Below are positions 896 to 63,724 of a DNA stretch of 64,000 nucleotides, piece after piece (within the stretch, counting starts at the first letter, position 1; every line of letters begins with the position of its first letter). The notes beneath the pieces were generated by a model. It was not told where the DNA came from. It saw nothing but the letters and a program-made list of their open reading frames with translations, and ran no database searches. A program made the position numbers and the translations under genes. The stretch covers positions 151,657 to 215,656 of IMG/VR virus record IMGVR_UViG_3300046694_000296; one strand, given 5' to 3'.

Positions 896-920
896 CCTAG
901 TAAGTAACGGATTACCAATC

Positions 921-1559
921 ATGCTGCAATCGGCCCAATCGACTATCAATACCCGCACCTCGACCCGCTACGAGGACCACACCGGCATGCTGCACAAACT
1001 CGCAAAGCGCGGCTGGGGCCGATTGCAGGAGGCAGGGCTCGACGTGACCTACGAGGACGTCTACCAGCATATGTGCGAGAGCTTCGTGAAGTGCCAGTCC
1101 ACCTACAAGGTCGACACCGGCTTCTCGTTCTCGGCGTATTACGGTCGCTCGATCTGGAACAACTTCAACCACTGGGCCGAGCGCCAGATCGAGGAGAAGC
1201 ATACGCTTGGCCTCGTCTCGGTCGAGAGCCTGTGCGGCAGCGACGACGAAGGCGAAACCGACGTGTTCGAATTCATCGAGCAAGAGGACGACGAAGAGAC
1301 GCCTGAAGACCGGCTCGCCGCGCGTCAGGAGTCGCACCGGCTTGCCCGCATGCTCTCGGACGATGCCAAGCGCATGGTCGCGCTGCTCGCGCACCAGACC
1401 CCGGCGCTCGAACAGTGGATGGACGAGCGCAACGCGCGCATGTTGAAAAAGACCTACCAAATCAACCTGTGGCTCATTGGCGAGTTCCTGGGTTTCGAGC
1501 GCAAGAAGGTGAGTCGCCTGCGCCTGGAGCTGGAGCGCGTCTACGGCGTGGAGCTGTGA
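921..1559 (+). CDS. sigma70-like transcription factor
   Basis: Region-2-like segment (YEDVYQHMCESFVKC...FSFSAYYGRSIWN) and C-terminal HTH-like segment (LWLIGEFLGFERKKVSRLR); ATG at 921. Confidence 0.55.
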   Translation: MLQSAQSTINTRTSTRYEDHTGMLHKLAKRGWGRLQEAGLDVTYEDVYQHMCESFVKCQSTYKVDTGFSFSAYYGRSIWNNFNHWAERQIEEKHTLGLVSVESLCGSDDEGETDVFEFIEQEDDEETPEDRLAARQESHRLARMLSDDAKRMVALLAHQTPALEQWMDERNARMLKKTYQINLWLIGEFLGFERKKVSRLRLELERVYGVEL

Positions 1560-2173
1560 TGAGCCACCCGAGCTGCTTCGGGCTGCCGTCGGTGTTCACC
1601 GCGAGCACGCAGACCTGCACGGCGTGCGCCTCGCGCAGCGAATGCGTGAGCGCCTGCTATTCGATGCTCGTCTCGCTCTCGGACAAGATCGACGTGACGG
1701 CCCCGCTCGCGCAGCTAGAGCGCACGGCCCGCGTCGTGACCGCGCAGTCGATACCCGCGCACGCGGTCGCAACGACGATCGCGGCGCCCGCGCCCGCCGC
1801 AGTGCAGGTGAACCTGGCGCACGGTGAGCGCGAGCATGACCTTCTTACGAGCCTGCCTGTGCGGGTGCAAAAGGTGATGCGCCCGCTTCTCAAGCGCGGC
1901 GGGGATGCCCGCGCACGCCTTGCGCTCGCGAAAGGGCAGAACCCCTTCGACGGGCGCGGCCCGCAGTGGTTGCGCCTTGCCGGTGAAAAGCTCCTCGCCG
2001 GCAGCTTCACCAAGGGCGAGCTGCGGCACGCCTACATCAACGAATACGGCTGGTCGGAGTCGACCGCCTTCTCGCGCGTGTCCATCGTCGTGTCGGTGAT
2101 TCCGGCGTTGCGTCTGGGCCGCGTCAGGGGCGACACGGTGCTTCGTGCGCCGACGCTCGCCCGGGATCATTGA
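1559..2173 (+). CDS. hypothetical protein: Cys-rich N-terminus, possible C-terminal winged helix
   Basis: Start overlaps upstream stop (TGATG); SCFG...CTAC...EC; 'KGELRHAYINEYGWSESTAFSRVS' is HTH-like. Confidence 0.55.
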   Translation: MSHPSCFGLPSVFTASTQTCTACASRSECVSACYSMLVSLSDKIDVTAPLAQLERTARVVTAQSIPAHAVATTIAAPAPAAVQVNLAHGEREHDLLTSLPVRVQKVMRPLLKRGGDARARLALAKGQNPFDGRGPQWLRLAGEKLLAGSFTKGELRHAYINEYGWSESTAFSRVSIVVSVIPALRLGRVRGDTVLRAPTLARDH

Positions 2174-2204
2174 AGCATCAACCCATTCACCGCAGGAGCT
2201 CAAG

Positions 2205-5200
2205 TTGAATATCAAGCACCTCCTGTCCGCGCGCAGCGATTTCTCGCTCGGGGAGTCCACCTTGCAGGTCGGCACCCTGATCGACACCGCGAAGGCGCAG
2301 GGCTATGAGACGGTCGCCCTCGTGGACAACATGACCATCTCCAACATGGTCGCGTTCACCGACAAGGCGAAGAAAGCGGGGATCAAGCCGATCGTGGGCT
2401 GCACGATTCGCATGGTCGACGATCCGACCTACCGCAAGCCGCCGAAGGCGTCGGGTGAGGTCGAGCGTCCGAACCCGCTCGTCATGCTCAAGGTCTACGC
2501 CAAGACCGACGCGGGCCTGCGCAGCCTCATGAAGCTGCTCTCCAAGGGAAACAGCCCGGAATACTTCTACTACCACTCGCGCGTGGGCCTCGAGGACGTG
2601 CTGCAGCTGGAGGAGTGCGCGGTGAGCACGGGCGACTTCTATGGCCTGTTCCATCACAAGCGCTGGGAGGAGATCGCATACCGGCTAAGCGAAAAGTTCG
2701 GCCGCGACTTCTGCGTCGAATTCGTGCCCGGCGGCACGCCGCTGCACAAGACGCTCAACAAGCTCGCGCTCCTTTGCCACGACCGCTTCATTTCGACGCC
2801 GATCGGCACCTGGCCCGCGCTCTATGCGACCGACGATCAAGCCGACAGCCTCGACGTGCTGCGCGCGATTCTCGGCAACAACAAGATGACCGACAGGTGG
2901 CTCAACAAGCCCTACCTGCGCAACTTCTCGATCCGCGCGCCGGGCGATCTGGTGCGCGCGCTCGTCGCGGAAGGCTTGCCCGCGAAGGAGATCATCAACG
3001 GCAACCAGGCGCTTGTCGATTCGTGCACGTTCGAATTCAAGAAGCTCGAGCCGTGTCTGCCGAAGATGGCCGACGACGAGTTTCTGGCGCTGGTCGAGCA
3101 GGTCAAGAAAGGCTGGGCGCAGCGCTTCGCCGCGCCCGTGCTCGGGCATCAGCCCGCGCCCGAAGAGCTGCCGCAATACAAAGCGCGCCTCGCTTACGAA
3201 CTGGACGTGCTGCGCAAGATGGGCTTCTCGGGCTACTTCCTGCTGGTGCAGCACATCGTGCAGTGGAGCAAGCAAAACGGCATTCTGGTCGGCCCCGGCC
3301 GCGGTTCGGTAGGTGGGAGCCTCGTCGCCTATCTGATGGGAATCACTGACGTCGATCCGATCCGCTTCAACCTGCTGTTCGAGCGTTTCATCAATCCTGA
3401 GCGTCTTGACTTGCCCGACGCCGACCTCGACTTTATGTCCAAGCGCCGGCATGAGGTGATCGACTACATCGCCGAGCACTTCGGGCGCGAGAACGTCGCG
3501 GGCGTGTCCAACTACAACACGATGGGCGCCGCGGGCGTGATGCGCGATACCTCGCGCGTGCACGAACTCAACCCGTTCGACTACGCCTGCTCGAAGCAGA
3601 TGGAAAAGCAGCACGGGGTTTCCCTCTCGCTGGAAGAGTCCGCTGCGATCGTGCCGGAGATCGACAAGTTCAAGGGCCAGTTTGCCGGCATCTGGAAGCA
3701 TATGGTCAACCTCGAAGGCGCGGCGCGCGGGCTCGGGCAGCACGCCGCCGGTGTGATCGTCGCGGGTGAGCCGATCATCAACCGCGCCGTGGTCGAGACA
3801 CGCACCGGCGGGCCGGTGTGCAATTGGGACAAGCGCACGGTCGAGGACTTCGGGCTCATCAAGATGGACATCTTGGGCCTGACCAACCTCGACGTGATGA
3901 AGCTCGCGGCCGACTACATCAAGGAGCGACACGGCAAGTCGATCGACTTCCTGCGTCTGCCGCTCGATGACAAGAAGGTGATGGAGGCATTCGGGCGGGG
4001 CGACACCACGGGCGTGTTCCAGTTCGAGTCGCCCGGCATGCGTCGGTTGCTGCGCGAGATGGCGCTCGCGGGTCCGGTGACCTTCGACGACCTCGTGGCG
4101 GTGGTCGCGCTCTATCGTCCGGGTCCGCTCGACGCGGGTCTGTGCGACGACTACGTGGCGATCAAGCAAGGGTCCAAGCAACCCTACTACGAGCACCCGA
4201 ACATGGCGCCCGCGCTGAAGGACACCTACGGGGTGATCGTGTATCAGGAGCAGGTGATGCAGATCGCGCGGGACTTGGCGGGCTTCACGATGGCCGGCGC
4301 CGACCACCTGCGTAAAGCGATGGGCAAGAAGGACAAGGAGAAGATGGCCGAGATGCGCCAGAAGTGGGTCGATGGCTGTATGACGCACTCAGGCATGTCC
4401 GAAGGCACGGCGCACGCGCTCTTTGACAAGATCGAAGTGTTCGCCGGCTACGCCTTCAACAAGTCGCACTCGGTGGAATATGCGGTGATTTCATTCTGGA
4501 CGATGTGGCTCAAGTGCTACTACCCGGCCGAATACTTCGCCGCCTCGCTCACCGAAATCGACAAAGAAGAGAAGCGCGAACCGCTCGTGCAGGACGCGCG
4601 GCGCATGGGCATGCAGGTCTTGCCACCCGACATCAACCATTCGAGCGCACGGGTAGAGATCGTGGGCGAGGACAAGCTCTACGCCCCGTTCCAGGCGCTC
4701 AAGGGTCTGTCCGAGAAGGCTGCGGGCTACATCGTCGATGCGCGCAACAAGTGGGGCAAGCCCTTTGCCAACCGCACCGACCTCGACGCGGCACTGAAGG
4801 CGGCGGAATACTCGGGCCGGCACATCAACCAGAGCGTGAAGGACAAGCTGGTGCTCATTGGTGCCTTCGCCGAGTGCGAGGGCGACAAGGTGCCCGCCAT
4901 GCACCCCGATCGGCTGAAAAACCGCATCGAGCTTCTGCCAGGTTTCACGGTCGATACTGTGAAAGCTGATCGAACGCTCAACGCTGAGCACCTTGCCTTG
5001 CTGCAACTGGTGCGCATCGGTGAGGAGACGCGCTCATGCGAGAAGTGTTCGCTCAAGGGCGGCTGTCACCCGATGCCGCGCATCGGTAAGACGCCGAAGT
5101 TCATGGTGGTGTCCGACAACCCGAACTGGCAGGAGGAGAAGGCGGGCAAGCTGCTCGAAGGCGACAACGCGAAGCTCGTCATCAACGCACTGAAGGAAGC

Positions 5201-5549
5201 GGGGCTCTCGGCGCAGGACGGCTATTTCACCACGCTGGTGAAGTCGGGCAAGCCGAAGGAGCAGAAGACGCTCACCAACGAGCAGATAAATGCGTGTAGC
5301 CAATATCTGCAGCGTGAGCTTGAAGTCCTCAAGCCACCAGTCATCGTAACGCTCGGCTCAAATGCCGCCCGTTTCTTCGCGCCGACTGTAAAGGGTGGAT
5401 CAATGGAGTTGGCTGGGAAAGTTATCTTCGATCCAAAGCGCGATGCGTCGATTGTGTTCGGGATCAATCCGGGTCAAATCTTCCACGATCCGGGCAAGTA
5501 TGCGGTCCTTCAGACGGTGGCAGCAAAAGTAGCTGATTTGGTCAGTTGA
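2205..5549 (+). CDS. dnaE: DNA polymerase III alpha (family C) with C-terminal uracil-DNA-glycosylase family-4-like domain
   Basis: PHP N-terminus, GPGRGS, ERF.NPER..PDADLDF, KMDILGL, GVFQFES, YAFNKSHS; probable TTG start at 2205 after AGGAG. Confidence 0.95.
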   Translation: MNIKHLLSARSDFSLGESTLQVGTLIDTAKAQGYETVALVDNMTISNMVAFTDKAKKAGIKPIVGCTIRMVDDPTYRKPPKASGEVERPNPLVMLKVYAKTDAGLRSLMKLLSKGNSPEYFYYHSRVGLEDVLQLEECAVSTGDFYGLFHHKRWEEIAYRLSEKFGRDFCVEFVPGGTPLHKTLNKLALLCHDRFISTPIGTWPALYATDDQADSLDVLRAILGNNKMTDRWLNKPYLRNFSIRAPGDLVRALVAEGLPAKEIINGNQALVDSCTFEFKKLEPCLPKMADDEFLALVEQVKKGWAQRFAAPVLGHQPAPEELPQYKARLAYELDVLRKMGFSGYFLLVQHIVQWSKQNGILVGPGRGSVGGSLVAYLMGITDVDPIRFNLLFERFINPERLDLPDADLDFMSKRRHEVIDYIAEHFGRENVAGVSNYNTMGAAGVMRDTSRVHELNPFDYACSKQMEKQHGVSLSLEESAAIVPEIDKFKGQFAGIWKHMVNLEGAARGLGQHAAGVIVAGEPIINRAVVETRTGGPVCNWDKRTVEDFGLIKMDILGLTNLDVMKLAADYIKERHGKSIDFLRLPLDDKKVMEAFGRGDTTGVFQFESPGMRRLLREMALAGPVTFDDLVAVVALYRPGPLDAGLCDDYVAIKQGSKQPYYEHPNMAPALKDTYGVIVYQEQVMQIARDLAGFTMAGADHLRKAMGKKDKEKMAEMRQKWVDGCMTHSGMSEGTAHALFDKIEVFAGYAFNKSHSVEYAVISFWTMWLKCYYPAEYFAASLTEIDKEEKREPLVQDARRMGMQVLPPDINHSSARVEIVGEDKLYAPFQALKGLSEKAAGYIVDARNKWGKPFANRTDLDAALKAAEYSGRHINQSVKDKLVLIGAFAECEGDKVPAMHPDRLKNRIELLPGFTVDTVKADRTLNAEHLALLQLVRIGEETRSCEKCSLKGGCHPMPRIGKTPKFMVVSDNPNWQEEKAGKLLEGDNAKLVINALKEAGLSAQDGYFTTLVKSGKPKEQKTLTNEQINACSQYLQRELEVLKPPVIVTLGSNAARFFAPTVKGGSMELAGKVIFDPKRDASIVFGINPGQIFHDPGKYAVLQTVAAKVADLVS

Positions 5550-5592
5550 GCCTCACTATACTCGGTAGCGTCTAGTAAGTAACAGGTGACAT

Positions 5593-6090
5593 ATGGAACA
5601 GTGGAAAGACGTCGTTGGCTACGAAGGGCGCTATCAGGTATCGGATCTCGGCAATGTGCGCAGCTTGCCGAATGCAACACGCTCGGGGGTCCGGCTTTTG
5701 GCGCTCAACACATTTCGCAACGGCTACAAATACGTGAACCTCTATCGAGGCACGTCAAAGAAGGAGAAGTGGCTCGTGCACATGCTGGTCGCGCAGGCAT
5801 TTATTGGCTCTGCACCGGTCGGGCAAGAAGTTCGGCACCGCGACGGCGTGCGCGGGAACTGCGCGCTTACCAACCTATGTTACGGAACGCGAGTAGAGAA
5901 CCAAGCAGATCGGATCGAGCATGGGACGTCTAATCAAGGCGTTAGGCATCCCCGCGCCAGGCTCGTAGAGACGCAAGTATTGGAGATTAGAAACTCCAAT
6001 GAGATCGCTTCAACATTAGCAGCAAAGTATTCAGTTTCAGAGTCGCTGATCCACCAGATCAAGCGATGCCAAGTATGGCGACACATTTAA
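5593..6090 (+). CDS. NUMOD4/HNH homing endonuclease
   Basis: EQWKDVVGYEGRYQVSDLGNVRS (NUMOD4), VHMLVAQAF...RHRDGVRGNCALTNL (HNH); lower GC than neighbours. Confidence 0.9.
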   Translation: MEQWKDVVGYEGRYQVSDLGNVRSLPNATRSGVRLLALNTFRNGYKYVNLYRGTSKKEKWLVHMLVAQAFIGSAPVGQEVRHRDGVRGNCALTNLCYGTRVENQADRIEHGTSNQGVRHPRARLVETQVLEIRNSNEIASTLAAKYSVSESLIHQIKRCQVWRHI

Positions 6091-6106: not shown

Positions 6107-6763
6107 ATGACAACTGACACCTTCTCCGTCGAGGAAATCGGCGCAATCGTCGGCGATATCGAGAACCCGCCCGTCGGCGGCACGAACGCAGCTGCCACCG
6201 CGCCCACTGTCGCCGCCTCCGCCAACGCACCGGCCGCGCAGCCTGCGGCAACCGTCTCGGGCCTGAAGGTCTTCGTGGATGCCGACCAGCTGAAGAAGGA
6301 TCTGGCGGTCAACCCGAACGATCTGGACGACGCGGTGACCAGCCAAGCGCCGATGTTCGTGCACTACGCGCAGCAAGCCGCGTATGCGCGCCGCCAGTAT
6401 GAGAAGAGCAAGCTCGCCGCTGAGATCATGGAAAGCCAGCTCGATAGCGCCTGGCGCAAGAAGCTCGCGGAAGACGGCGGCAAGGTGACCGAGAAGATGG
6501 TCGAGAACGCCGTGAAGGCCGATCCGCGCTATGCGAAGGCACACAATCAGGTGATCGAGGCCCGGGCGCTCTTTGACATCGCGAACGACGCGCGTGAAGC
6601 CTATATGCAGCGCAAGGACATGATCGTGCAGGTGTCGGTCGATCGCCGTCGCGAGCGCGAAGGGCAGATGCGCATTCTCGCGGCGAAGGAAGGCGAGAAC
6701 GCAACGCAGTCGGGCCGTGAAGCCGCGCTCGCCGCAGAAGCCGCGCGCCGCCAAGCCGCCTGA
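6107..6763 (+). CDS. UvsY-like recombination mediator (putative)
   Basis: Helical protein with 'KVTEKMVENAVKADPRY'; next to SSB and RecA. Confidence 0.5.
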   Translation: MTTDTFSVEEIGAIVGDIENPPVGGTNAAATAPTVAASANAPAAQPAATVSGLKVFVDADQLKKDLAVNPNDLDDAVTSQAPMFVHYAQQAAYARRQYEKSKLAAEIMESQLDSAWRKKLAEDGGKVTEKMVENAVKADPRYAKAHNQVIEARALFDIANDAREAYMQRKDMIVQVSVDRRREREGQMRILAAKEGENATQSGREAALAAEAARRQAA

Positions 6764-11096: not shown

Positions 11097-11540
11097 ATGG
11101 CTGAGCTGAAGGTCAAGGAGTGGAAACCGTCACCCTGCGGCAAGTATCAGTCGGCGCAGGTCAAGAAGGGCCACAACCTCTACGGCGAGATCCGCAAATA
11201 CACGAACGGCATGAGCATCTACTGGGCCTTCAGGAAGCCCGACGAGGTGTTCGTGGAGCTTGACGCCTGGGCGATCGACACCGAGACGATCTCCGTGATG
11301 AAGAGCCGGCGCGTCACCCACATCGGCATCCTCGTCTCGAACGGCGACCAATACCTGACGCGCATCGAGACGATGACCGACAAGGACAAAGGTGCGGTCG
11401 TCCTCAACTACACCACCCATCGCGGCGCACGCGGCAAGTTCGGCGCCCGGCAGTGGTATCTGCCGCGCAGCCAGTTCGTGCAGCAACTCGCGCCGCCCGA
11501 GTCCACCATCGAGCAGATGAAGATCAAAGGACGAAGATAA
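11097..11540 (+). CDS. hypothetical protein
   Basis: Translationally coupled ORF with typical codon usage. Confidence 0.6.
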   Translation: MAELKVKEWKPSPCGKYQSAQVKKGHNLYGEIRKYTNGMSIYWAFRKPDEVFVELDAWAIDTETISVMKSRRVTHIGILVSNGDQYLTRIETMTDKDKGAVVLNYTTHRGARGKFGARQWYLPRSQFVQQLAPPESTIEQMKIKGRR

Positions 11541-11596
11541 GTAAGCCGTTACGTGTTTGCTACAATCGGTCATTCTGAAATGAGGGAACCAACACG

Positions 11597-12004
11597 ATGA
11601 TTCTAGCCACAGCGCTTTTATGCCTGACCATGAATGTTTACTTCGAGGCCCGCGACCAACCGATTGCCGGGCAATACGCAGTCGCCGCCGTCACCATGAA
11701 CCGCGCGGCCGACGATCCGAAACAGGTCTGCGATGTGGTGATGCAGCCGCATCAATTCAGCTGGACCGATAAGCTCCTCCAGCGCGACGAAGTGGGCTGG
11801 AAGCTGCGCAAGGCCGGCGTGCCCAAGGACGACTTCGCATGGGCTATGGCAAGCCGAGTCGCCTTCAACACGCTCAATGGCCACAAGATCGACGCCACGC
11901 ACGGCGCGACCTACTATCACACGAAGGAAGTGCGCCCCGCGTGGCGCAAGCAATTCATCCACGCAGTGACGATCGGCGACCACGTTTTTTATCGCGTAAC
12001 GTAA
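11597..12004 (+). CDS. SleB/Hydrolase_2-family cell wall hydrolase
   Basis: CLTMNVYFEARDQ...AVAAVTMNR...VCDVV.QPHQFSW...GATYYH...IGDHVFY. Confidence 0.9.
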   Translation: MILATALLCLTMNVYFEARDQPIAGQYAVAAVTMNRAADDPKQVCDVVMQPHQFSWTDKLLQRDEVGWKLRKAGVPKDDFAWAMASRVAFNTLNGHKIDATHGATYYHTKEVRPAWRKQFIHAVTIGDHVFYRVT

Positions 12005-12075
12005 GCAACGCGTTACTATACTATCACCTGTAGCGAACAAGTTTCACCCTATCAACCACTCAGGAGTCACCTCGC

Positions 12076-16843: not shown

Positions 16844-16976
16844 GCGCGCAAGCGCTCTGCCTACCTATACTGAAAAGGGAAGAGGTCGCAAGGGCGACTT
16901 ATTTTTTGGCTTTGCTGTAGAGTAACCGCTGACTTACAATCTCTTCCCCCTCTCCGAACGAACCCGAGAAACACTG

Positions 16977-24563: not shown

Positions 24564-24941
24564 CCATGACGAACGAACGGAAGAAAGAGATCGAGGCGAT
24601 CGGCGACCAGGAATGGCGACAGATGATGAACGAGGTGGACGTCGCCGATGGGTTGAGGCCCGAGCGGCGGATTTTCACCATCATGCCGAGCGTGAAGCAG
24701 AACATTTCGTTCTTCGGCGCAGCGCACGAGACGATCCTCTACGTCACGGAGGAGGGCGAGTTCAACTGGTGCGCGAACCCGGAGGAGGCGATCCTCGCGA
24801 TGGAGGCGGCCGGCACGAACAAGCCGATTGCCGCGCTGCTGCGTCGTTTGCGCGATTACGAGAATCAAGTTTGAGCTCCAATCGCTCACGCTTACTATAC
24901 TGGTAAGTAACACGTTACCAACCAACTATTACAGAGGGAAC

Positions 24942-29698: not shown

Positions 29699-30216
29699 GA
29701 TCCTGCTGTTCAACCTGCTGGTCCCCGCAATTGCTCACCCGAAGGTGGCGCATTTACGGCTGCTCTCGACGCTTGCGCTCCTCATCAAGCTGCCCGTCTT
29801 AGGTATGCTGGGTCGGGTGACCTCGGAAGACGTGAGCATTGAGGAATTAACCAAGCGTCTGAAATCGGTCCAATGACCAGTCTGTAGAGTCTGAATTTGC
29901 AATTGGTTGCACAGGGAAAGCGCAGAGGCGCTTTTATTTTCCCTGTGTGTGTAAGTAATGCCTTACTCATACTATACTGAGTGGAGAGGCTAATGAGAAC
30001 GCCGCGAAAGAGCTACCGCATCTATGGCCGCGCCCCGCGCCACGGTAGTTTCAAGGCAATGGATATGCATAATATGATTCAAGCGTCTCGGATAAGTAAA
30101 GCAACAACTTACTGGGACCGCACCGAAGCTGAGGCAAAGAAGCTGAAGGCTTGGGTGGATGAGTTGAATGCTGAGAAAACTGGCTGGTTGTATGAATTGA
30201 GGGAGGTAAAGGACAA

Positions 30217-51180: not shown

Positions 51181-51651
51181 CGATGATGGGTTACTAGACC
51201 GGCCAGAGATCAGCCGAAGCAGCAGTCATATGAAGCCCATCGGGTTCCCGGAACCACCATCGGCATCCTCGAGCTCGCGCTCGATGTGTTGGATGCGCGC
51301 AACCTGCTCGGGGTCTTGCATCACGGGCGGCTCGGGCATGAAGAACAGACCCATGAGCGCCAGTGCGTTGCCGGTGAGCGCCAGCGTGAGTGCGACGATC
51401 GCAATCACCCCGACGATGTGCAACACGAACAGCAGCGGAACACGTGAAGGGAACACAGCTTTCTCCTTGAAAAGTAAGCTGGCGCTTACTCTACGCGCTT
51501 CGGCGCCCGAACACAAACCCTGCGGCGAACACGCACCACAGGATTTGCCCTGCCACGGCGCCGGCCGTCCAGTGCCCACCGTGTTCGAACGCGAACAGCA
51601 GGCCCGCGATGGTCGCGCCGATGAAGCTGCCCATCAGGACGAGAAAAGGTT

Positions 51652-53370: not shown

Positions 53371-53371
53371 T

Positions 53372-54019
53372 TCAATAAACCGTGTGTTTGCGGATCGGGG
53401 TGTTGATCGCTTTTTCGTGGGACCAGCCTTTCTTGAGCCGGTAGCGAAGGGCCTGTGTCGAGCATCCGATCTCCCGCGCCCATGCTTCCATAGGCTGCGT
53501 GCGCCCGTTCGCGGTCAGCAGAACCGTTGTGCTCATGTTCGCGCCCTGTTCTTGGCGCGTCGCCCATCGACAGTTGGAGGGTTCGTAGTTGCCATCGACC
53601 TCGTTTCGTTCGAGTGTGGTGCCGCGCGAACGCGGCCCCATGTCGGCATAGAAGTTCTCGAACGTCTTCCACCGCTCGCAGACTGTGATGCCGCGGCCGC
53701 CGTATCGCTCGTAGCCATTGCAGCGGGGATCACCGGTGCGATAGAGCATCGCCTGCCACGTCCGGTATTCAGGCGTGTCGGCCATACCGTGCGTGCGCCG
53801 ACAGTCGCCGCTCTTTGCAACCTCAAGCTGCAGGCAGCCGCACGACCGCACCTTGCCGCGCTTCAAATCCGCGCTCGCGGCGGTGTGCTCCTTCCCGCAA
53901 TCGCACACGCACATCCATTTTTCGCTGCCCGCATACGACAGCGCGCGCAGGCGCCCGAACTGTTTATTCGTCAGGTCTTGGGGCTTAGGCCCGCTTTTCT
54001 TCTTGCCGGTCGATTCCAT
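53372..54019 (-). CDS. free-standing HNH-like endonuclease
   Basis: DLTNKQFGRL, W.C.CDCG, SCGC, YGGRGITVCERW..FENFYADMG, LER..VDGNYEPSNCRWAT..EQ.AN. Confidence 0.85.
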   Translation of the reverse strand: MESTGKKKSGPKPQDLTNKQFGRLRALSYAGSEKWMCVCDCGKEHTAASADLKRGKVRSCGCLQLEVAKSGDCRRTHGMADTPEYRTWQAMLYRTGDPRCNGYERYGGRGITVCERWKTFENFYADMGPRSRGTTLERNEVDGNYEPSNCRWATRQEQGANMSTTVLLTANGRTQPMEAWAREIGCSTQALRYRLKKGWSHEKAINTPIRKHTVY

Positions 54020-54059
54020 GTGTGGAAAAATGAGTAACGCGTGACTTACCTTATACCAG

Positions 54060-54707
54060 ATGACAACTACTCCGACAGCTCTCCGTGTTTCCGTTGACGC
54101 GCTTCGTGCAAATCCGTGGAACACCAACAGCCTCACACCCGAGAACGAAGCGAAGCTCGATGCTTCCATCGTGCGCTTCGGCGTCTACAAGCCGATCGTC
54201 GTGCGCCCGCACCCGGACGGCGAGGGCTACGAAATTCTGGGCGGTCAGCATCGGTGGGAGGCAGCGCGCCGCGCGGGCCACGCTGATGTGCTGATCGTCA
54301 ACGTCGGCCCCGTGTCTGATCTGACGGCCAAAGAGATTGGCCTCGTCGACAACGGCCGCTACGGCGAAGACGACACGCTGGCGCTCTCGCGCTTGCTCAA
54401 GGAGATGGGCGTCGAGGACATCGGCACCTTCCTTCCCTACACCGACGGCGAGCTGGAAAACATTCTCGCTGCTTCAAGTATAGATCTCGACGACCTAGAC
54501 AAGCTGGATGAGGCCGAAATGCCTGATCTGTCGGGTCCGGGCGTGGGCGCCACGCATCAGGTGATGCGCTTCAAGGTGCCTGTCGAGGATGTCGCGTGGG
54601 TCACGAGCGCCATCGAGCGCCGCCAGCGCGAGGCCGGTTTCACCACCGAAGACTCCATGACGAACGCCGGCATGGCCTTCGTCGATCTGATGAAGGCATA
54701 CAAATGA
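54060..54707 (+). CDS. ParB/Srx N-terminal-domain protein
   Basis: LRANPWNTN, GVYKPIVVRP, EILGGQHRWEAA; no obvious HTH. Confidence 0.8.
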   Translation: MTTTPTALRVSVDALRANPWNTNSLTPENEAKLDASIVRFGVYKPIVVRPHPDGEGYEILGGQHRWEAARRAGHADVLIVNVGPVSDLTAKEIGLVDNGRYGEDDTLALSRLLKEMGVEDIGTFLPYTDGELENILAASSIDLDDLDKLDEAEMPDLSGPGVGATHQVMRFKVPVEDVAWVTSAIERRQREAGFTTEDSMTNAGMAFVDLMKAYK

Positions 54708-55168
54708 TCCGCTACATCGGCACCAAGGTCATTCTCGCGCGCCCCATGACGCGCGGCGCATACAACGACTATCGAGGCTGGACGATTCCCGCCAACGAAG
54801 ACCCGCTTGAAGAAGGCTATCTCGTCGAATACACGGACGGCGGTGCGTCGAACCACGTCAACCACGCGGGCTATGTCTCCTGGAGCCCCAAGGACGTGTT
54901 CGAGGCAGCCTACCGACCCACCGTCGGCATGAGCTTCGGTATGGCTATCGAGGCGATGAAGATAGGCATGCGCGTCGCACGCGTGGGCTGGAACGGCAAG
55001 GGCATGTTCCTTGAGCTTTTCAGCCCATCCGGTGCCGGCCTCATTCTCCAATCGGGCGAGAGCATCTCCGAGCTTCCGTGGATCGGTATGAAGACCGTCG
55101 AGGGCAAGTTCGTGCCTTGGTTCGCATCGCAGGCTGACATGCTCTCGGACGACTGGATCACGGTATGA
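54704..55168 (+). CDS. DUF2829/Tad2-like domain with an extra N-terminal domain
   Basis: C-half MSFGMAIEAMKIGMRVARVGWNGKGMFL...VPWFASQADMLSDDW; N-half YIGTK...GYLVEY...YVSWSPKDVFEAAY. Confidence 0.75.
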   Translation: MIRYIGTKVILARPMTRGAYNDYRGWTIPANEDPLEEGYLVEYTDGGASNHVNHAGYVSWSPKDVFEAAYRPTVGMSFGMAIEAMKIGMRVARVGWNGKGMFLELFSPSGAGLILQSGESISELPWIGMKTVEGKFVPWFASQADMLSDDWITV

Positions 55169-55434: not shown

Positions 55435-56075
55435 GCCAAGTCACCCGAACCAATGAAGTGCGTGCGGTCGCCGACCTCGTGCCGTATGCGAAGAACGTCA
55501 AGAAGCACGACGACGCGCAGGTCGCCAAGATCATCGAGTCGGTCCAGCAATTCGGCTGGACGCAGCCCATCGTGATCGACGAAGCCAACGTCATCATCGC
55601 CGGCCACGGCCGGCGCCTGGCGGCCACCAAGCTCGGCATGAAGCAGGTGCCGGTGCTCGTGCTGCGCGGCCTGACCGATGAGCAGAAGCGCGCGCTGCGC
55701 CTGGCCGACAACCGCACGAACGAGGGCGGCATCGACACGCTCATGTTCCGCGAGGAGATGCTTGGCATCGAGGATCTGCTCACCGGCATCTTCGACACGA
55801 AGGAGCTCGAGTTCTCGGCGGCCGATCTGGGCACGCTCAACGAGGCTGCCTTCGTGCCCGACGTCGCGGAAGCGGTCGAGATGCAGGAGATGGAAGCGCA
55901 CGCGAAGGCCGATGAAGTCGTTGCGCGCCGCGTGCCGCTCTCCAAGGCATTCGGCTTCAAGGACGTGGCCGGCGCGCACGAGATCCACATCTCGCGCTTC
56001 ATGGCGCGTGCGCAGGCCGAAACCGGGTTGACGGGCGCCGACGCGCTCGCGGCTTTCCTCGAAACCCTCGCGTAA
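55431..56075 (+). CDS. ParB/Srx N-terminal-domain protein (type often fused to phage DNA-modifying enzymes)
   Basis: LVPYAKNVKKH...QFGWTQPIVID..IIAGHGR..AA..LG...LRLADN. Confidence 0.85.
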   Translation: MSQVTRTNEVRAVADLVPYAKNVKKHDDAQVAKIIESVQQFGWTQPIVIDEANVIIAGHGRRLAATKLGMKQVPVLVLRGLTDEQKRALRLADNRTNEGGIDTLMFREEMLGIEDLLTGIFDTKELEFSAADLGTLNEAAFVPDVAEAVEMQEMEAHAKADEVVARRVPLSKAFGFKDVAGAHEIHISRFMARAQAETGLTGADALAAFLETLA

Positions 56076-56089
56076 GTAACCCGTAACTC

Positions 56090-56806
56090 ATGACCACATA
56101 CACCATCGACAAGCGCTTCCACACGCGCGTCGCGCGCAGCCAGCGCGTCGTGGAAGTCGCTGAAGCGTTCGGCCTTGGGCTGGACGACAAGGAATTCGTG
56201 ATCTTCGACCAGCTGAAGCTGGACGTCGCGCAAGGCGACGTGATCTACATCACCGGCCAGTCCGGCAGCGGCAAGTCGCTGCTCCTGCGCGAGCTGTCCG
56301 CGCAGATGGCCGCCGAAGGCCAGAAGGTCGCGAACCTCGATGAGGTGGCGATCGACCCGGATGCGCCGCTCATCGACCAGATCGGCACCAGCACGAACGA
56401 TGCGATCCGGCTGCTCTCGATTGCCGGCCTGAACGACGCGTATCTCTTCATCCGCAAGCCCGGCGAGCTCTCCGACGGCCAGCGCTACCGCTTCAAGCTC
56501 GCCAAAGCCATCGAGTCGCAGGCCGACGTCTGGGTCGCTGACGAGTTCATGGCGGTGCTCGACCGGACCGCGGCCAAGGTGATCGCGTATGCCGTGCAGA
56601 AGACCGCGCGCAAGGTCAACGCGACCGTGATCGTTGCGACTACCCACCTCGACCTCGTGGAAGACCTGCAGCCGTCGCTCTACATCGAAAAAAGGTATCG
56701 AGAAAAGCTGCGCATCGAAGCATTCACCGACCTCAACGCGGCGGCCGAAGGCTCGAAGACCCTCACGCGCGATGAAGCCTACGACCTCATGAAAAGGATG
56801 GCCTGA
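56090..56806 (+). CDS. stand-alone ABC ATPase
   Basis: GQSGSGKS, LSDGQRYR, VADEF, ATTH; no permease nearby. Confidence 0.85.
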   Translation: MTTYTIDKRFHTRVARSQRVVEVAEAFGLGLDDKEFVIFDQLKLDVAQGDVIYITGQSGSGKSLLLRELSAQMAAEGQKVANLDEVAIDPDAPLIDQIGTSTNDAIRLLSIAGLNDAYLFIRKPGELSDGQRYRFKLAKAIESQADVWVADEFMAVLDRTAAKVIAYAVQKTARKVNATVIVATTHLDLVEDLQPSLYIEKRYREKLRIEAFTDLNAAAEGSKTLTRDEAYDLMKRMA

Positions 56807-61084: not shown

Positions 61085-62656
61085 ATGTCGCTTAGCCAGA
61101 AACAGCTCCAGACGTTCATCAAGCGCCGTCATCCGCTCTATGAGCAGATGCAGGCGCATTGGGACTTCCTCGAGCAGACCTATGAAGGCGGCCGGCAGTG
61201 GTTCGTCGACAACCTGCACAAATACCGCAAGGAGGGCGATCAGGAGTATCAGGATCGCCTCAAGCGCGCCTATCGCTTCAACCACACGCGCGAGGTGGTC
61301 GATCTCCTGGACAAATACGTCTTCAAGATCGACATCAAGCGCAACGAGGACGCGCCCGACTACATCAAGGAGTTCTGGAAGCGCTCGACGCTCAATGGCA
61401 GCCCGATCGCCGACTACATGAAGCGTGTGTCCAACCGCTCATCGACGTTCGGCCGGATCTGGATCGTGGTCGATTCGACGAAGACCGCCGATGTGAAGAG
61501 CGTGGCTGACCAGAAGGCGGCCGATGCGCGCTGCTACAGCTACATCGTCAAGCCCCGCCACGTGCTCGACCTCTCGACCGACGAACTCGGCAAGCTCAAC
61601 TGGATTCTGATCTACGAGACGGCGCGCGATGACGCAGATCCGCTCACTTCGAGTGGCGAGATCATCGAGCGCTACCGCCTGTGGACGCGCGATGCCTCGC
61701 AGCTCTTCACGGTGGTGTATCAGCGCGGCAAGCCGATCATCCTGGTCGATGAGCCTGTCGCGCACGGTCTGGGCGTGGTCCCGGTGTTCGCCGCCGACAA
61801 CGTGATTTCGGACGAGCCCTACACGTCGCCCGCGCTGATCGCCGACGTCGCGTATCTCGACCGGGCGGTGGCGAACTACCTCTCGAACCTCGACGCGATC
61901 ATCCAGGACCAGACGTTCAGCCAGCTCGTGATTCCGAGCCAGGCGATCCCGGCGGGCGACGAGGGCTACGACAAGCTGGTGGAGATGGGCACGAAGCGCA
62001 TTTTCACGTATGACGCGACCGGTGGCGGCAAGCCCGAGTTCATCAGTCCGGACGTGAAGCAGGCGCAGCTCATCGTCGCGACGATCTCCAAGATCATCAA
62101 CGAGATTTATCACTCGACGGGCCTCGCCGGCGAGCGCACCAAACAGGACAACTCACAGGGCATCGACAACAGCTCCGGCGTTGCCAAGGCGTATGACTTC
62201 GAGCGCGTCAATTCGCTGCTCACCGCCAAGGCTGATTCGCTGGAACAGGTCGAGCGCCAGCTGTGCTACTTCGTCTCGCTCTGGAACGGCAAGAGCGACG
62301 TGGACTTCGCGCCCGACGCGACGGCCACCGATAAGGTCGGCCAGATGGTTGAGTATCCGAAGGACTTCGATGTCCGCGGCCTCTACGACGAATTCGACAT
62401 CGCCGCGCGCCTCGCGCTGATTGACGCACCGGACGCGATGCGCCGTCAGCAAATGGAAGCGACGATCGACAAGCTGTTCCCGATGCTCAAGCAGGATCTC
62501 ATCGACAAGATGAAGGCCGAGCTCAAAGCATGGCCGCCGAAAGACGTTTTGGCGGCGCCGGGCGCAGGTGGTTCGCCTGTCTCCTCGCAAGAGATTCAAA
62601 AGACAGGCGGCAAGCAAGTCGCCGGGCAGATGTTGAACCCCGGCAAAGCAGCATAA
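61085..62656 (+). CDS. portal protein
   Basis: Position after terL; HPLY...W..L.QTYEGG, Y..RL.RA..FN, SGVAKAYDF. Confidence 0.85.
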   Translation: MSLSQKQLQTFIKRRHPLYEQMQAHWDFLEQTYEGGRQWFVDNLHKYRKEGDQEYQDRLKRAYRFNHTREVVDLLDKYVFKIDIKRNEDAPDYIKEFWKRSTLNGSPIADYMKRVSNRSSTFGRIWIVVDSTKTADVKSVADQKAADARCYSYIVKPRHVLDLSTDELGKLNWILIYETARDDADPLTSSGEIIERYRLWTRDASQLFTVVYQRGKPIILVDEPVAHGLGVVPVFAADNVISDEPYTSPALIADVAYLDRAVANYLSNLDAIIQDQTFSQLVIPSQAIPAGDEGYDKLVEMGTKRIFTYDATGGGKPEFISPDVKQAQLIVATISKIINEIYHSTGLAGERTKQDNSQGIDNSSGVAKAYDFERVNSLLTAKADSLEQVERQLCYFVSLWNGKSDVDFAPDATATDKVGQMVEYPKDFDVRGLYDEFDIAARLALIDAPDAMRRQQMEATIDKLFPMLKQDLIDKMKAELKAWPPKDVLAAPGAGGSPVSSQEIQKTGGKQVAGQMLNPGKAA

Positions 62657-62733
62657 GACCCCGGCGGGTCGAGTGACCGGCCCGCCACACACAACCGACG
62701 GGCAAGAGAACGCCCACTGAAAGGCAACACACG

Positions 62734-63633
62734 ATGAACGCACTTCTTCGCAAGCTCCTGATGCAACAGGGCTACATGGACTCCCAAGGCGCCGAGGGCG
62801 GCGCAGGCGGTGGCGGCAATGCTCCGGCCAATGCTCCGGCAGGCGACCCGCCCGCAGGTGGTGCAGGTGGCGCAGGTGAGAACACCGGCAAGGCCGGCGG
62901 CGCAGGCGGCCAGGGTGGTCAAGGCGACCCGGCTGGCGGCAAGCCCTCGGACGAGGAAGCTCGTCTGCTCAAGGAAGTGATGGACAAGAAGGACAAGCTG
63001 AAGAATGCCCAGACGGCGCTCGAGCAAGCGAATGCTCGGCTGAAGGACTTCGACGGCATCGACGCCGCGCAGGTGCGCGCACTGCTGAAGGAAAAGGCTG
63101 ACGCTGAACTGGCGAAGCTCGAAGCGAAGGGCGAGTGGGATCGCCTGAAGCAGCAGATGGCCGACCAGCACGCCGCCGACATCGCTGCGCGCGATCAGGC
63201 GATGACCGCTGCGCAGTCGCAAGTGTCCGAACTCCAGTCACAGATCGCGGAGCTGACCGTGGGCAATGCCTTCGGCCAGAGCAAGTTCATCGCCGACGAG
63301 CTGACGCTCTCGGTTGCCAAGGCACGTCGCATTTACGGCGCGCACTTCGAGTTCAAGGACGGCGCAGTCGTCGCCTATGACAAGCCCGCGGGCGCCAAAG
63401 AGCGCACGGTGCTGGTCGATTCGAAGGGCGAGCCGCTGAGCTTCGATGCGGCGCTCTCCAAGCTCGTCGATGGCGATCCCGACAAGGACACGCTCATCAA
63501 GAGCAAGCTGCGCGCGGGCGCGGGCTCCAGCACCAACCCGGCGGCCGCACCGAGCGCGAAGCCCGGCGTGAACGCACCGCTTACGGGGCGCGCGAAGATC
63601 GCTGCGGGCCTCGCGAGCGCGGGCCTCAAGTAA
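62734..63633 (+). CDS. capsid scaffolding protein
   Basis: Gly-rich N-terminus, coiled coil, GAGS C-terminal region; between portal and capsid. Confidence 0.75.
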   Translation: MNALLRKLLMQQGYMDSQGAEGGAGGGGNAPANAPAGDPPAGGAGGAGENTGKAGGAGGQGGQGDPAGGKPSDEEARLLKEVMDKKDKLKNAQTALEQANARLKDFDGIDAAQVRALLKEKADAELAKLEAKGEWDRLKQQMADQHAADIAARDQAMTAAQSQVSELQSQIAELTVGNAFGQSKFIADELTLSVAKARRIYGAHFEFKDGAVVAYDKPAGAKERTVLVDSKGEPLSFDAALSKLVDGDPDKDTLIKSKLRAGAGSSTNPAAAPSAKPGVNAPLTGRAKIAAGLASAGLK

Positions 63634-63724
63634 GCCGTGCACAAAATGTTGTAAACCCGTGGCGTTCCTGTTAAAGTAAGTCACGGGTTACTTTACCCAT
63701 TTTCTTTTCGAAAGGAAGATTGAT

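What the first reader, a model, noticed from the sequence alone, without database searches (positions are those of the whole stretch)
903..63692. Genome-wide 14-bp palindrome in front of most transcription units
Seen: about 21 intergenic copies of AGT(A/C)AC-NN-GT(T/G/A)ACT, often preceded by TA. Its right half overlaps a TATACT -10 box at 6795, 12004 and 20557; it sits just downstream of TATACT at 5578, 22085, 24906, 27595 and 36935, just upstream of TATACT/TACAAT at 29954 and 16921, inside the spacer at 48497, and over the -35 at 58966. It occurs before replication, accessory, modification, terminase, portal and capsid genes, and before the HNH genes. Inference: one dimeric regulator silences or times the whole genome through many operators, which would suit a plasmid-prophage state, unlike a lambda-style single switch.
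Basis: partly seen in the sequence, partly recalled or inferred. Interest (0 to 1): 0.75.

Follow-up and report, generated by a model that had tools for sequence, protein, structure and literature searches.

The report
Dispersed repressor operators of a phage-plasmid
A 20-base palindrome sits on or beside the promoters of about 37 gene blocks of a 108-kb phage that also lives as a plasmid; it is most likely the binding site of one small phage repressor that keeps the whole virus silent, and the same layout recurs across the large SSU5 family of phage-plasmids.

Summary
The motif is an 18-20 bp palindrome, (G)TAAGTNAC-NN-GTNACTTA(C). There are 21 copies in the window and 74 in the 215-kb record. 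Simulated sequence gives 0-3. About 93% of copies are intergenic, although only 13.5% of the DNA is.

The record is two collinear, ~80% identical ~108-kb genomes joined by assembly, so there are ~37 sites per genome. Of 37 sites, 32 keep their position between the two copies. The specified bases are conserved (4% change against 19%). The arms do not covary, so this is a protein site, not a hairpin.

Sites overlap or directly follow -10-like boxes at variable offsets, or fill gene junctions. That geometry fits repression.

Just upstream of the window lies a plasmid module: RepA with iterons, ParA, and a toxin-antitoxin pair. Beside it is a 151-aa XRE-type helix-turn-helix gene facing three sites. 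It is the only detectable XRE-type protein. It is also the only protein shared with palindrome-bearing relatives (Cyrano, RHEph10) and absent from palindrome-free lytic nickie.

Cupriavidus and Acinetobacter ~105-kb plasmids carry the same protein family and 26 AGTCA-N4-TGACT sites each. Binding and repression are inferred, not shown.

The closest analogues are P1 C1 operators, L5 stoperators and RK2 KorA. I found no prior description.

The parts
900..919 (.). Palindrome site GTAAGTAACGGATTACCAAT, abutting the start codon (921) of the sigma-like gene, after the CobS-like AAA gene
   Evidence: PWM 22.8 bits. Positional ortholog in copy A at 45306.
5575..5594 (.). Site 18 nt downstream of a CACTATACT box (5557), after dnaE
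   Evidence: 24.2 bits
6792..6811 (.). Site whose right arm merges into TATACT (6808)
   Evidence: 23.0 bits, offset -16. Ortholog in A at 50667.
11537..11556 (.). Site 24 nt upstream of TACAAT. The stop codon TAA of the upstream gene lies in its left arm.
   Evidence: 20.1 bits, identical in copy A
12001..12020 (.). Site with its right arm merging into TATACT (12017)
   Evidence: 22.8 bits, offset -16
16918..16937 (.). Site filling the spacer of TTGCTG-17-TACAAT in front of the ribonucleotide reductase large subunit, just after a terminator-like hairpin (16883-16900)
   Evidence: 22.2 bits
20554..20573 (.). Site with its right arm merging into TATACT (20570)
   Evidence: 26.2 bits
22082..22101 (.). 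Site 1 nt after CACTATACTG (TATACT at 22075)
   Evidence: 25.0 bits, offset +7, identical in copy A
24903..24922 (.). Site 1 nt after TACTATACTG (TATACT at 24896)
   Evidence: 23.5 bits
27592..27611 (.). Site overlapping the end of CACTATACT (27588), 14 nt before a gene start
   Evidence: 22.3 bits, offset +4
29951..29970 (.). Site 2 nt upstream of TATACT (29973), after an RNase H-like gene
   Evidence: 25.2 bits
36932..36951 (.). Site 1 nt after GGCTATACTG (TATACT at 36925)
   Evidence: 20.2 bits
40155..40174 (.). Site at a tight gene junction, with no recognisable -10
   Evidence: 27.1 bits
48494..48513 (.). Perfect palindrome GTAAGTAACGCGTTACTC inside the spacer of TTGCGT-16-TATAAT, in front of a 223-aa ORF of unknown function
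   Evidence: 27.5 bits
49265..49284 (.). Perfect palindrome at the stop codon of the same 223-aa ORF, followed by a GC-rich hairpin
   Evidence: 24.8 bits, conserved in A at 91096
54030..54049 (.). Site in the divergent region between the HNH/UvsW-like helicase operon (minus strand) and the ParB_N gene (plus strand)
   Evidence: 27.5 bits. Same position as the Cyrano site at 105112.
56072..56091 (.). Site exactly spanning a gene junction: the upstream stop TAA is in the left arm and the next ATG is in the right arm
   Evidence: 27.2 bits
58963..58982 (.). Site 18 nt upstream of TATAGT, over its -35 position, before the small-terminase-like DNA-binding gene
   Evidence: 25.6 bits
61045..61064 (.). 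Site between the putative large terminase (assigned by synteny) and the portal gene
   Evidence: 27.3 bits. A site sits at the same junction in Cyrano (2025), RHEph10 (112699), the Cupriavidus plasmid (21433) and the A. baumannii plasmid (81846).
63676..63695 (.). Site whose left arm overlaps TAAAGT of TTGTAA-17-TAAAGT, ahead of the head genes
   Evidence: 27.8 bits
58661..58680 (.). Weak copy inside a coding region, probably not functional
   Evidence: 15.7 bits, in a CDS
921..1559 (+). 212-aa sigma-factor-like gene. It may serve the CAC-TATACT-G promoters that lack a -35. It is a member of the regulated set, not the palindrome binder.
   Evidence: Sigma70_r2 E=5e-4 (below cut-off) and phrog_351 sigma factor E=3.5e-5. 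RHEph10 gp045 at the same position is annotated as a sigma factor.

Best explanation
The palindromes are operators of one phage-encoded dimeric repressor. The phage is a ~108-kb member of the SSU5 supercluster and can persist as a low-copy plasmid, with RepA plus iterons, ParA plus partner, and a toxin-antitoxin pair.

A 151-aa XRE-family helix-turn-helix protein is encoded just upstream of the window (G000:C1:147848-148303, minus strand; L001:6848-7303). Its gene is monocistronic with its own terminator and lies next to the plasmid module. I propose that this protein binds as a dimer to (G)TAAGTNAC-NN-GTNACTTA(C).

About 37 such sites per genome lie over the -10 box, in the spacer, over the start site, or at gene junctions. 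They front the replication, nucleotide-metabolism, accessory, packaging, head and tail operons. A bound dimer would shut out RNA polymerase, or block read-through at the junction sites. The whole lytic programme would then be held off in the plasmid-prophage state, while repA, parA and the toxin-antitoxin genes, which lack sites, stay on.

The repressor gene itself has two sites downstream of its own TATAAT box, which suggests autoregulation. The facing 79-aa gene has one site directly after TACAAT.

Shown here: the motif statistics, the intergenic placement, conservation of the specified bases, absence of arm covariation, the plasmid module, the HTH fold, and co-occurrence across lineages. 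Inferred: that these hexamers are promoters, that this protein is the binder, and that binding represses.
For: Motif statistics: 74 non-overlapping places against 0-3 in simulations, with about 93% intergenic (69-70 of the hits).

Conservation: 32 of 37 sites keep their position between two ~80% identical genome copies. High-information positions differ at 4.3%, low-information positions at 18.8%.

Geometry: offsets to the -10-like boxes vary (-16, -17 to -24, +4, +7, +18), and some sites span stop/start codons. This fits occlusion or roadblock, not activation from a fixed position.

No sites occur in the repA-parA-toxin-antitoxin block. Three sites lie in the 247-bp divergent region beside the HTH gene.

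The HTH gene is the only XRE-type hit in the whole record. Iterons and par repeats have other sequences, so RepA and the ParA partner already have their own sites.

The AF2 model has pLDDT 93, and its N-terminal domain superposes on 434 Cro (2.1 A over 64 residues), P22 c2, SinR and DdrO. A family profile hits the PDB entry 'immunity repressor' 8bny at E=7e-5.

Phyletic profile: of about 145 proteins, only this one has homologs in both palindrome-bearing Cyrano and RHEph10 and none in palindrome-free nickie.

Relatives with the HTH gene all carry sites:
- The 76%-identical relative, contig L014, has sites.
- The 48%-identical relative, integrated next to an integrase in prophage L012, has 4 sites in the phage DNA and none in 8.6 kb of host DNA.
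- IMG/VR relatives carry AGTCA-N4-TGACT.
- The Cupriavidus and A. baumannii ~105-kb plasmids have one family member each (E=1e-40) and 26 sites each, against about 0.6 and 3 expected. In the A. baumannii plasmid, 12 of 13 checked sites are intergenic by PGAP annotation.

The Cyrano homolog CYRAN_45 is transcribed 10-fold above background in the lysogen and is listed as the putative master repressor (PMC9928086, Table 1).
Against: No binding, footprint, transcription start or expression data exist for this phage. No RNA run holds it.

Pfam support for the HTH is below the curated cut-off (E=0.002), and all Foldseek E-values exceed 1e-3.

SSU5 lacks the HTH gene yet keeps 8 exact TAAGT-N4-ACTTA sites. 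That fits a recent virulent deletion mutant, as D29 is to L5. It would equally fit another binder that acts in lytic growth.

The TATACT promoters have no -35, so some sites at the fixed -16 offset could help rather than hinder transcription.

The half-site spacing differs between lineages (AGTNA-N0, -N4 and -N8-TNACT). That is unusual for one conserved dimer.

Small fast-evolving proteins, such as the 79-aa neighbour, could escape the phyletic-profile test.
Confidence: 0.65

Rival explanations
1. The palindromes are bound by a different, still unidentified phage or host factor that acts during lytic growth. It could be a timing switch or an activator of promoters that lack a -35. In that case the XRE protein controls only its local switch region.
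For: SSU5 has no HTH homolog but keeps 8 exact sites at conserved positions. Ten sites sit at exactly -16 from TATACT, and these promoters have no -35 information. The phage encodes a sigma-like protein.
Against: Many other sites lie 4-18 nt downstream of the -10 box or across stop/start codons, where an activator cannot work. The sigma-like gene is absent from Cyrano and SSU5, which have sites. A gene at the same cobS-dnaE position (gp102, not shown to be a sigma homolog) exists in nickie, which has none. No other protein shows the matching phyletic pattern. No other XRE-type domain was found, and of the RHH_1 and HTH_17 families only weak hits appeared, the RHH one in the ParA partner. D29 keeps L5 stoperators without a repressor (PMC5712189), so SSU5 is not decisive.
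Confidence: 0.17
2. The sites are centromere-like or silencing sites of a partition protein, in the manner of ParB, KorB or SopB. They would serve plasmid segregation and spread repression from there.
For: The element is a plasmid with a ParA and a small RHH-like partner, and it has two ParB_N-domain genes in the window. From my own knowledge, KorB of RK2 and the dispersed N15 centromeres are precedents.
Against: The region upstream of parA carries its own different repeats (TTGGTATCAAGA x3) and no palindrome. The ParB_N genes are also present in nickie, which has no palindromes. About 37 sites placed tightly on core promoters is not a centromere pattern.
Confidence: 0.05
3. The symmetry reflects a nucleic-acid structure. 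Candidates are RNA hairpins (processing or stability signals, or terminators) or DNA cruciforms or hairpin promoters.
For: Perfect copies could form 8-9-bp stems. Some lie at gene ends, and the site at 49265 is followed by another hairpin.
Against: Complementarity at the variable pairs is no higher than chance: pair 7/14 shows 26 observed against 33.6 expected, and pair 9/12 shows 41 against 45. The loop would be only 2 nt. Many sites lie upstream of the presumed start sites. There are no Rfam hits.
Confidence: 0.03
4. The repeats are not regulatory. They would be recombination or mosaic-boundary sequences, restriction-modification-related motifs, or passive remnants spread together with promoter cassettes.
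For: Three sites of copy A lie in segments unaligned with B. From PMC5712189, stoperators are known to mediate deletions. The core GTNAC is itself a short palindrome.
Against: Purifying selection acts on exactly the specified bases between A and B. Positions are conserved from Acinetobacter to Rhizobium phages while the sequence co-varies with lineage. GTNAC alone is neither enriched nor avoided (644 observed against about 738 expected).
Confidence: 0.05

Closest known systems
Phage P1 C1 repressor and its dispersed operators
   Same: A phage-plasmid whose immunity repressor acts at many operators scattered over a ~90-100-kb genome. PMC8546580 gives 22 C1 operators. This is not a single lambda-type switch.
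   Different: P1 operators are an asymmetric 17-mer (ATTGCTCTAATAAATTT) and C1 is not an XRE protein. Here the sites are symmetric 18-20-mers and the candidate is a small XRE HTH. Sites also sit directly on structural-gene operons. No Coi/Lxc/Ant-type partners were identified.
Mycobacteriophage L5 gp71 operator and stoperators (Cluster A)
   Same: One repressor with about 24-30 sites in short intergenic regions across the whole genome, blocking both initiation and elongation. The sites are conserved in a lytic deletion derivative that lost the repressor (D29; PMC5712189, PMC9283540). That parallels SSU5 against Cyrano. Several sites here sit at gene junctions without a promoter.
   Different: Stoperators are asymmetric 13-mers, oriented with transcription and bound by a monomer with two domains. 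Here the sites are palindromic and unoriented, and the host phages are unrelated (Pseudomonadota phage-plasmids).
RK2/IncP global regulators KorA and KorB
   Same: From my own knowledge: dimeric regulators with palindromic operators repeated at many promoters of a plasmid. KorA sites overlap the -10 box, giving coordinate silencing of the backbone.
   Different: That is a plasmid system, not a phage system. KorB is a ParB homolog that acts at a distance. There is no sequence relationship. Here the ParB_N proteins do not track the motif.
Lambda, 434 and P22 cI/c2-Cro switches (XRE-type repressors)
   Same: The fold of the DNA-binding domain matches (434 Cro 2.1 A, P22 c2 1.7 A). The operators are palindromic, and the divergent region between the repressor gene and a small facing gene holds three sites.
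   Different: No S24 autocleavage domain is present. The C-terminal domain is helical instead. About 34 further operators are spread over the genome, so control is not confined to two early promoters.

Membership tests
XRE / lambda-repressor-like HTH prophage repressors | Five-helix HTH DNA-binding domain | tested here: met
   The AF2 model has pLDDT 93. Residues ~20-90 superpose on 434 Cro, P22 c2, SinR, DdrO and ImmR. The family profile hits PDB 8bny 'immunity repressor' at E=7e-5. Pfam HTH_31 is only E=0.002, below its cut-off.
XRE / lambda-repressor-like HTH prophage repressors | Palindromic operators clustered between the repressor gene and a divergent lytic gene | tested here: met
   Three sites lie in 247 bp between the 151-aa gene (minus strand) and the 79-aa gene (plus strand). 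Two follow a minus-strand TATAAT and one follows TACAAT.
XRE / lambda-repressor-like HTH prophage repressors | RecA-stimulated autocleavage (Peptidase_S24 domain) | tested here: not met
   There is no PF00717 match anywhere in the record. The C-terminal half is helical. The element is therefore not a cI/LexA-type cleavable repressor, and the induction route is unknown.
XRE / lambda-repressor-like HTH prophage repressors | Demonstrated binding of the protein to the operators, and repression | not testable with these tools
   This needs EMSA, footprinting, ChIP and reporters.
Dispersed-operator immunity systems (P1 C1, L5 gp71) | Tens of repressor sites spread over the whole phage genome, mostly in short intergenic regions | tested here: met
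   About 37 sites per genome, about 93% intergenic.
Dispersed-operator immunity systems (P1 C1, L5 gp71) | Asymmetric site bound by a monomer and, for stoperators, oriented with transcription | tested here: not met
   The motif is a symmetric palindrome.
Dispersed-operator immunity systems (P1 C1, L5 gp71) | Sequence homology of the repressor to C1 or gp71 | tested here: inconclusive
   The sequence and profile searches of solved structures listed no C1 or gp71-type chain, but I did not check that such chains are in that library, and no direct comparison with C1 or gp71 was run. The analogy is functional only.
SSU5-supercluster phage-plasmids | Homologous and syntenic head, tail and replication genes in a ~100-115-kb genome | tested here: met
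   The portal is 53% identical to Cyrano/SSU5 and 58% to Cupriavidus and Acinetobacter plasmids. DnaE is 43-45% identical to RHEph10 and nickie. The order HTH - small gene - CobT - CobS - DnaE is conserved.
SSU5-supercluster phage-plasmids | Plasmid replication and partition functions | tested here: met
   RepA_C at E=3e-31 with 6+2 iterons, a ParA (CbiA/MipZ), and ParE/PaaA2.
ParB/KorB-type centromere or silencing sites | Sites at the par operon, co-occurring with the ParB-type protein | tested here: not met
   No palindrome lies upstream of parA, where different repeats are found. nickie has the ParB_N genes but no motif.
Structured RNA or DNA hairpin elements | Compensatory changes that keep the arms complementary | tested here: not met
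   Complementarity at the variable pairs is at or below the independence expectation. There are no Rfam hits.

The most novel reading that the evidence does not exclude
The palindromes and this HTH family may form an ancient, family-wide 'flat' control circuit of the SSU5, pHCM2 and pABTJ2-like phage-plasmids, which account for about 1000 plasmid records. In this reading one repressor gates every operon directly, including the head and tail genes, with no late-activator cascade. Lineages would have re-tuned immunity by changing both the half-site letters and the half-site spacing (AGTNA-N0, -N4 or -N8-TNACT). Alternatively, because the repressor-less SSU5 keeps its sites, the sites may be a new kind of core promoter element read by an unknown factor in lytic growth.
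Probability: 0.2. Interest if true: 0.65.

Novelty: new member of a known kind. Interest (0 to 1): 0.5.

Why it matters
SSU5-type phage-plasmids are common. Portal homologs occur in 966 PLSDB plasmids, mostly ~105-kb non-mobilizable plasmids of Klebsiella, Escherichia, Acinetobacter, Enterobacter, Yersinia and Salmonella. Some carry resistance genes (PMC9600943).

Their lysogeny control has not been described in the papers I could search. The pABTJ2 paper even states that no phage repressor is present (PMC4411360).

This finding gives a concrete, testable repressor-operator pair and a map of the regulon. The pair can be transferred to tractable relatives such as E. coli Cyrano or PhiR41_1. It also offers a natural series of operator variants for studying how immunity specificity evolves.

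The kind of system itself, a dispersed-operator prophage repressor, is already known from P1 and L5.

Tried and rejected
Near-identity DNA search against phages gave only short hits, so relatives had to be found at the protein level.

Candidate binders examined and set aside:
- The minus-strand cluster at 50151-54019 looked like a possible immunity region. It is a UvsW-like helicase plus HNH, with no regulator.
- The 223-aa ORF bracketed by two perfect sites has no Pfam, PHROG or convincing Atlas relatives. Its role is unresolved.
- The sigma-like protein does not track the motif across relatives.
- Host LexA is unlikely: the motif follows phage lineage rather than host, and the Cyrano motif is not the E. 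coli SOS box (my own knowledge).

- The generic sigma-70 scan found no promoters at the sites.
- RNA evidence: no transcriptome holds the phage.
- The search for related loci with the 68-sequence alignment failed for lack of a conserved stretch. The 6-sequence alignment worked.
- The built-in 'backwards' control of the pattern search is not a clean control here, because it also matches the related TCANT-N4-ANTGA core of the same palindromes. I used composition-based expectations instead.

Literature searches for the motif strings and for SSU5 operators found nothing. The Gilcrease and Casjens paper on plasmid prophages is not in the library and could not be checked.

Full report
**1. What is in the sequence**

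Aligning all hits of the core GTNACNNGTNAC showed that the conserved unit is longer: (G)TAAGTNAC-NN-GTNACTTA(C), an 18-20-bp palindrome.

A symmetric 20-position weight matrix, iterated to convergence, finds 74 non-overlapping places (75 raw hits above 14 bits) in the whole record and 21 in the window. The score distribution is bimodal, and first-order Markov simulations give 0-3 hits.

I called genes with a GC3 and codon-usage model. True genes have GC3 of about 0.85 in this 62% G+C genome. About 93% of the sites (69-70 of the hits) fall in the 13.5% of the DNA that is intergenic (P about 1e-53).

**2. The 'genome' is two genomes**

The window is the last 64 kb of a 215,656-bp IMG/VR record with a 127-bp end overlap. 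A self-comparison shows two collinear copies, A (1-108,902) and B (108,903-215,529), at 71-89% identity.

The only exact stretch of 127 bp or more shared by A and B is 156 bp long, and it lies exactly at the contig start and at the A/B junction. That is the signature of a figure-8 in a k=127 assembly graph.

Public rhizosphere runs show different A:B depth ratios: about 1:1, 1:4 and 1:7. One contig reads the B-end-to-start closure. A 105,058-bp contig from another sample carries the identical HTH gene.

So there are two related ~107-109-kb phages with about 37 sites each. They give a built-in comparative test.

**3. Selection on the sites**

Of the 37 sites in A, 32 have a site at the aligned position in B. 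Two are aligned without a scored site, and three lie in unaligned segments.

Between orthologous sites, the eight high-information positions differ at 4.3% and the twelve low-information positions at 18.8%. The latter is the level of the surrounding intergenic DNA. The sites were chosen by the matrix in both copies, so part of this contrast is expected by construction. Retention of position in 32 of the 34 aligned cases is not.

Complementarity between the two arms at variable positions is no higher than chance. The N of GTNAC is often T..T, A..A or C..T. The symmetry is therefore that of a dimeric protein site, not of a hairpin.

**4. Geometry**

TATACT occurs 27 times on the plus strand. All 27 are intergenic, 37-110 nt before genes, with consensus nAC-TATACT-G and no information at -35. 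Relative to such boxes, and to TACAAT, TATAAT, TATAGT and TAAAGT, the palindrome occupies several positions:
- It starts at -16 (ten cases, with the right arm fused to the box).
- It starts at -17 to -24 (inside the spacer or over the -35 position).
- It overlaps the box with its left arm (offsets -4 or -5, in the late region).
- It begins 4, 7 or 18 nt after the box.

Several sites span a stop codon and the next start codon with no room for a promoter (56072, 900, 40155). Several upstream genes use the TAA of the left arm as their stop.

Variable placement on or just after the core promoter, together with junction sites, is what repressor operators and roadblocks look like. An activator would need a fixed upstream position.

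About 40-50% of gaps of 30 bp or more carry a site.

**5. What the element is**

Protein searches place it in the SSU5 supercluster of ~100-115-kb siphoviral phage-plasmids. The portal is 53% identical to E. coli Cyrano and Salmonella SSU5. DnaE is 43-45% identical to Rhizobium RHEph10-like phages and Pseudomonas phage nickie.

Portal homologs occur in 966 plasmid records. The best are 106-107-kb Cupriavidus metallidurans and Acinetobacter baumannii plasmids.

Immediately upstream of the window, on the minus strand, lie:
- ParE/PaaA2.
- A RepA_C gene with six direct and two inverted 21-22-bp iterons.
- A ParA and a 124-aa partner with a weak C-terminal RHH match, preceded by their own TTGGTATCAAGA repeats.
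- A monocistronic 151-aa helix-turn-helix gene with its own terminator.

The plasmid-prophage idea is therefore directly supported.

**6. The candidate regulator**

The 151-aa gene faces a 247-bp region with three palindromes. Two lie downstream of a minus-strand TATAAT, in its own leader. One lies directly after the TACAAT of the opposite 79-aa gene. CobT, CobS, the sigma-like gene and DnaE follow.

The supporting evidence is as follows:
- It is the only XRE-type match in the record. No S24 domain exists.
- PHROGs calls it a transcriptional regulator.
- The family is large, with 1249 representatives.
- The AF2 model is confident (pLDDT 93). It shows a five-helix XRE domain like 434 Cro, P22 c2, SinR and DdrO, plus three C-terminal helices.
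- RepA and the ParA partner have their own distinct repeats, so this is the DNA-binding protein left without a site, next to the sites left without a protein.

**7. Comparative test**

- Cyrano has a homolog (CYRAN_45, 'putative repressor') in the same synteny. It also has about 36 gene-boundary palindromes of the related form TAAGTA-NN-TACTTA, against 6.6 expected. The gene is transcribed in the lysogen (PMC9928086).
- RHEph10 has a 30%-identical homolog and its own palindrome AGTCAAT-N4-ATTGACT at 14 or more intergenic places. These include both sides of the HTH gene and the terminase-portal junction.
- nickie is lytic, with no plasmid module and no homolog. It has no enriched palindrome at all.
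- Among all B proteins, only the HTH protein is shared with Cyrano and RHEph10 but not with nickie.
- A 48%-identical homolog lies next to an integrase in an integrated prophage of a Pseudomonadota MAG. There are four sites in the phage part and none in 8.6 kb of host DNA.
- IMG/VR relatives of 105-112 kb carry AGTCA-N4-TGACT.
- The Cupriavidus and A. baumannii plasmids each carry one family member (E about 1e-40) and 26 AGTNA-N4-TNACT sites, mostly AGTCAGCGCTGACT or AGTCAGTACTGACT. In the A. baumannii plasmid, 12 of 13 checked sites are intergenic by PGAP, and gene order and site positions match.

One observation cuts the other way. SSU5, described as virulent (PMC5427195), has lost the integrase-HTH-small gene segment but keeps eight exact sites. 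This parallels D29, a repressor-less deletion derivative of an L5-like phage that keeps its stoperators (PMC5712189). It leaves room for another binder.

**8. Mechanism proposed**

A dimer of the XRE protein occupies the ~37 operators in the plasmid state. It occludes the -10 or start region of most plus-strand operons and blocks read-through at junction sites. The repA, parA and toxin-antitoxin genes, which have no sites, remain expressed, and the repressor limits its own synthesis.

How the block is lifted is unknown. There is no cleavage domain, so an antirepressor is a reasonable guess. The 79-aa gene opposite the repressor is a candidate Cro-like or anti-repressor function, and that is inference only.

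The CAC-TATACT-G promoters without a -35 may depend on the phage's sigma-like protein (window 921-1559). This is unresolved.

**9. Comparison and novelty**

In function this resembles P1 C1 (22 dispersed asymmetric operators; PMC8546580), L5 gp71 stoperators (PMC5712189, PMC9283540) and, among plasmids, KorA/KorB of RK2 (my own knowledge). In protein type it is an ordinary XRE dimer with palindromic operators.

It is not homologous to C1 or gp71 as far as tested, and its sites are symmetric. I therefore file it as a new member of the known kind 'dispersed-operator prophage repressor'. It is notable for being conserved across a very widespread phage-plasmid family.

I found no description of the operators, or of this repressor's role, in the searchable literature.

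**10. Verdict**

Confidence that these are operators of a phage repressor acting as described is about 0.65. Interest is moderate (0.5).

Noticed in passing
whole record G000 (window = G000:C1:151657-215656); junction at G000 108902/108903: The 215,656-bp 'complete, DTR' virus record is two collinear ~80% identical ~108-kb genomes joined head to tail. They share a single exact stretch of 127 bp or more (156 bp), which lies at the contig start and at the junction. Their depth ratios differ between samples. It is probably a k=127 figure-8 misassembly of two co-occurring strains.
   Followed up: yes
window 44800-45170 (copy A: G000 87150-87310), inside a ~1-kb non-coding stretch 44172-45220: An array of about eight (C/G)CTATAAG or CGTATAAG repeats at irregular 13-34-bp spacing, conserved between both genome copies. 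It could be a second (lytic?) origin or a binding array. ATAAG overlaps the left half-site of the palindrome.
   Followed up: partly
window 921-1559 (+), and the 27 plus-strand TATACT boxes, e.g. 5557, 6808, 10258, 16866, 22075: The phage encodes a sigma-like protein (weak Sigma70_r2 and phrog_351 matches). Its nAC-TATACT-G promoters carry no -35 information, and four TATACT boxes have no palindrome. Which polymerase form reads them is open.
   Followed up: partly
window 48597-49268 (+): A 223-aa ORF of unknown function with lower G+C (about 55%). It is bracketed by two perfect palindromes (48494 and 49265) and followed by a GC-rich hairpin. It has no Pfam or PHROG hits, and the Atlas gives only hypothetical-protein clusters. 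It may be a specially tightly controlled gene.
   Followed up: partly
L001 (G000:141001-153000): 5126-5288 and 5466-5507; 6647-6684; 2859-3328: The plasmid replicon lies outside the window. It comprises RepA_C with six direct and two inverted iterons (CGAATAGATGGGGGCG), TTGGTATCAAGA repeats upstream of parA, and a ParE/PaaA2 toxin-antitoxin pair.
   Followed up: yes
window 54704-55168 (+): A 154-aa protein with a Tad2-like (Thoeris anti-defence 2) domain, Pfam E=1.9e-21, directly after a ParB_N-domain gene.
   Followed up: no
L003-L005 (Escherichia phage Cyrano), e.g. 29260, 32081, 58596, 70327, 93166: Cyrano has a second multi-copy intergenic palindrome, (ATAAGA)AAACAA-N-TTGTTT, in 12 copies directly before gene starts. 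This suggests a second regulon in the enteric branch. No counterpart was seen in this phage.
   Followed up: no
relatives: Cyrano/SSU5, this phage, RHEph10 (L009-L011), W03, W04: The half-site AGT(C/A)A is shared across lineages, but the spacing between half-sites differs in steps of 4 bp: AGTNA-N0-TNACT in many enteric sites, N4 here and in the Cupriavidus, Acinetobacter and IMG/VR relatives, and N8 in RHEph10. One rigid dimer does not explain this.
   Followed up: partly
NC_018843.1 (SSU5), region 41776-42761 (L017): SSU5 lacks the integrase, HTH repressor and small divergent gene that Cyrano has between the tRNA cluster and cobT, yet it keeps eight exact TAAGT-N4-ACTTA sites. It looks like a virulent deletion derivative, as D29 is to L5.
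   Followed up: partly
window 11538-11540, 12002-12004, 49266-49268, 56073-56075: Several upstream genes end with the TAA that forms part of the left arm (G/A-TAA-GT) of the palindrome. The operator and the stop codon therefore overlap and constrain each other.
   Followed up: no
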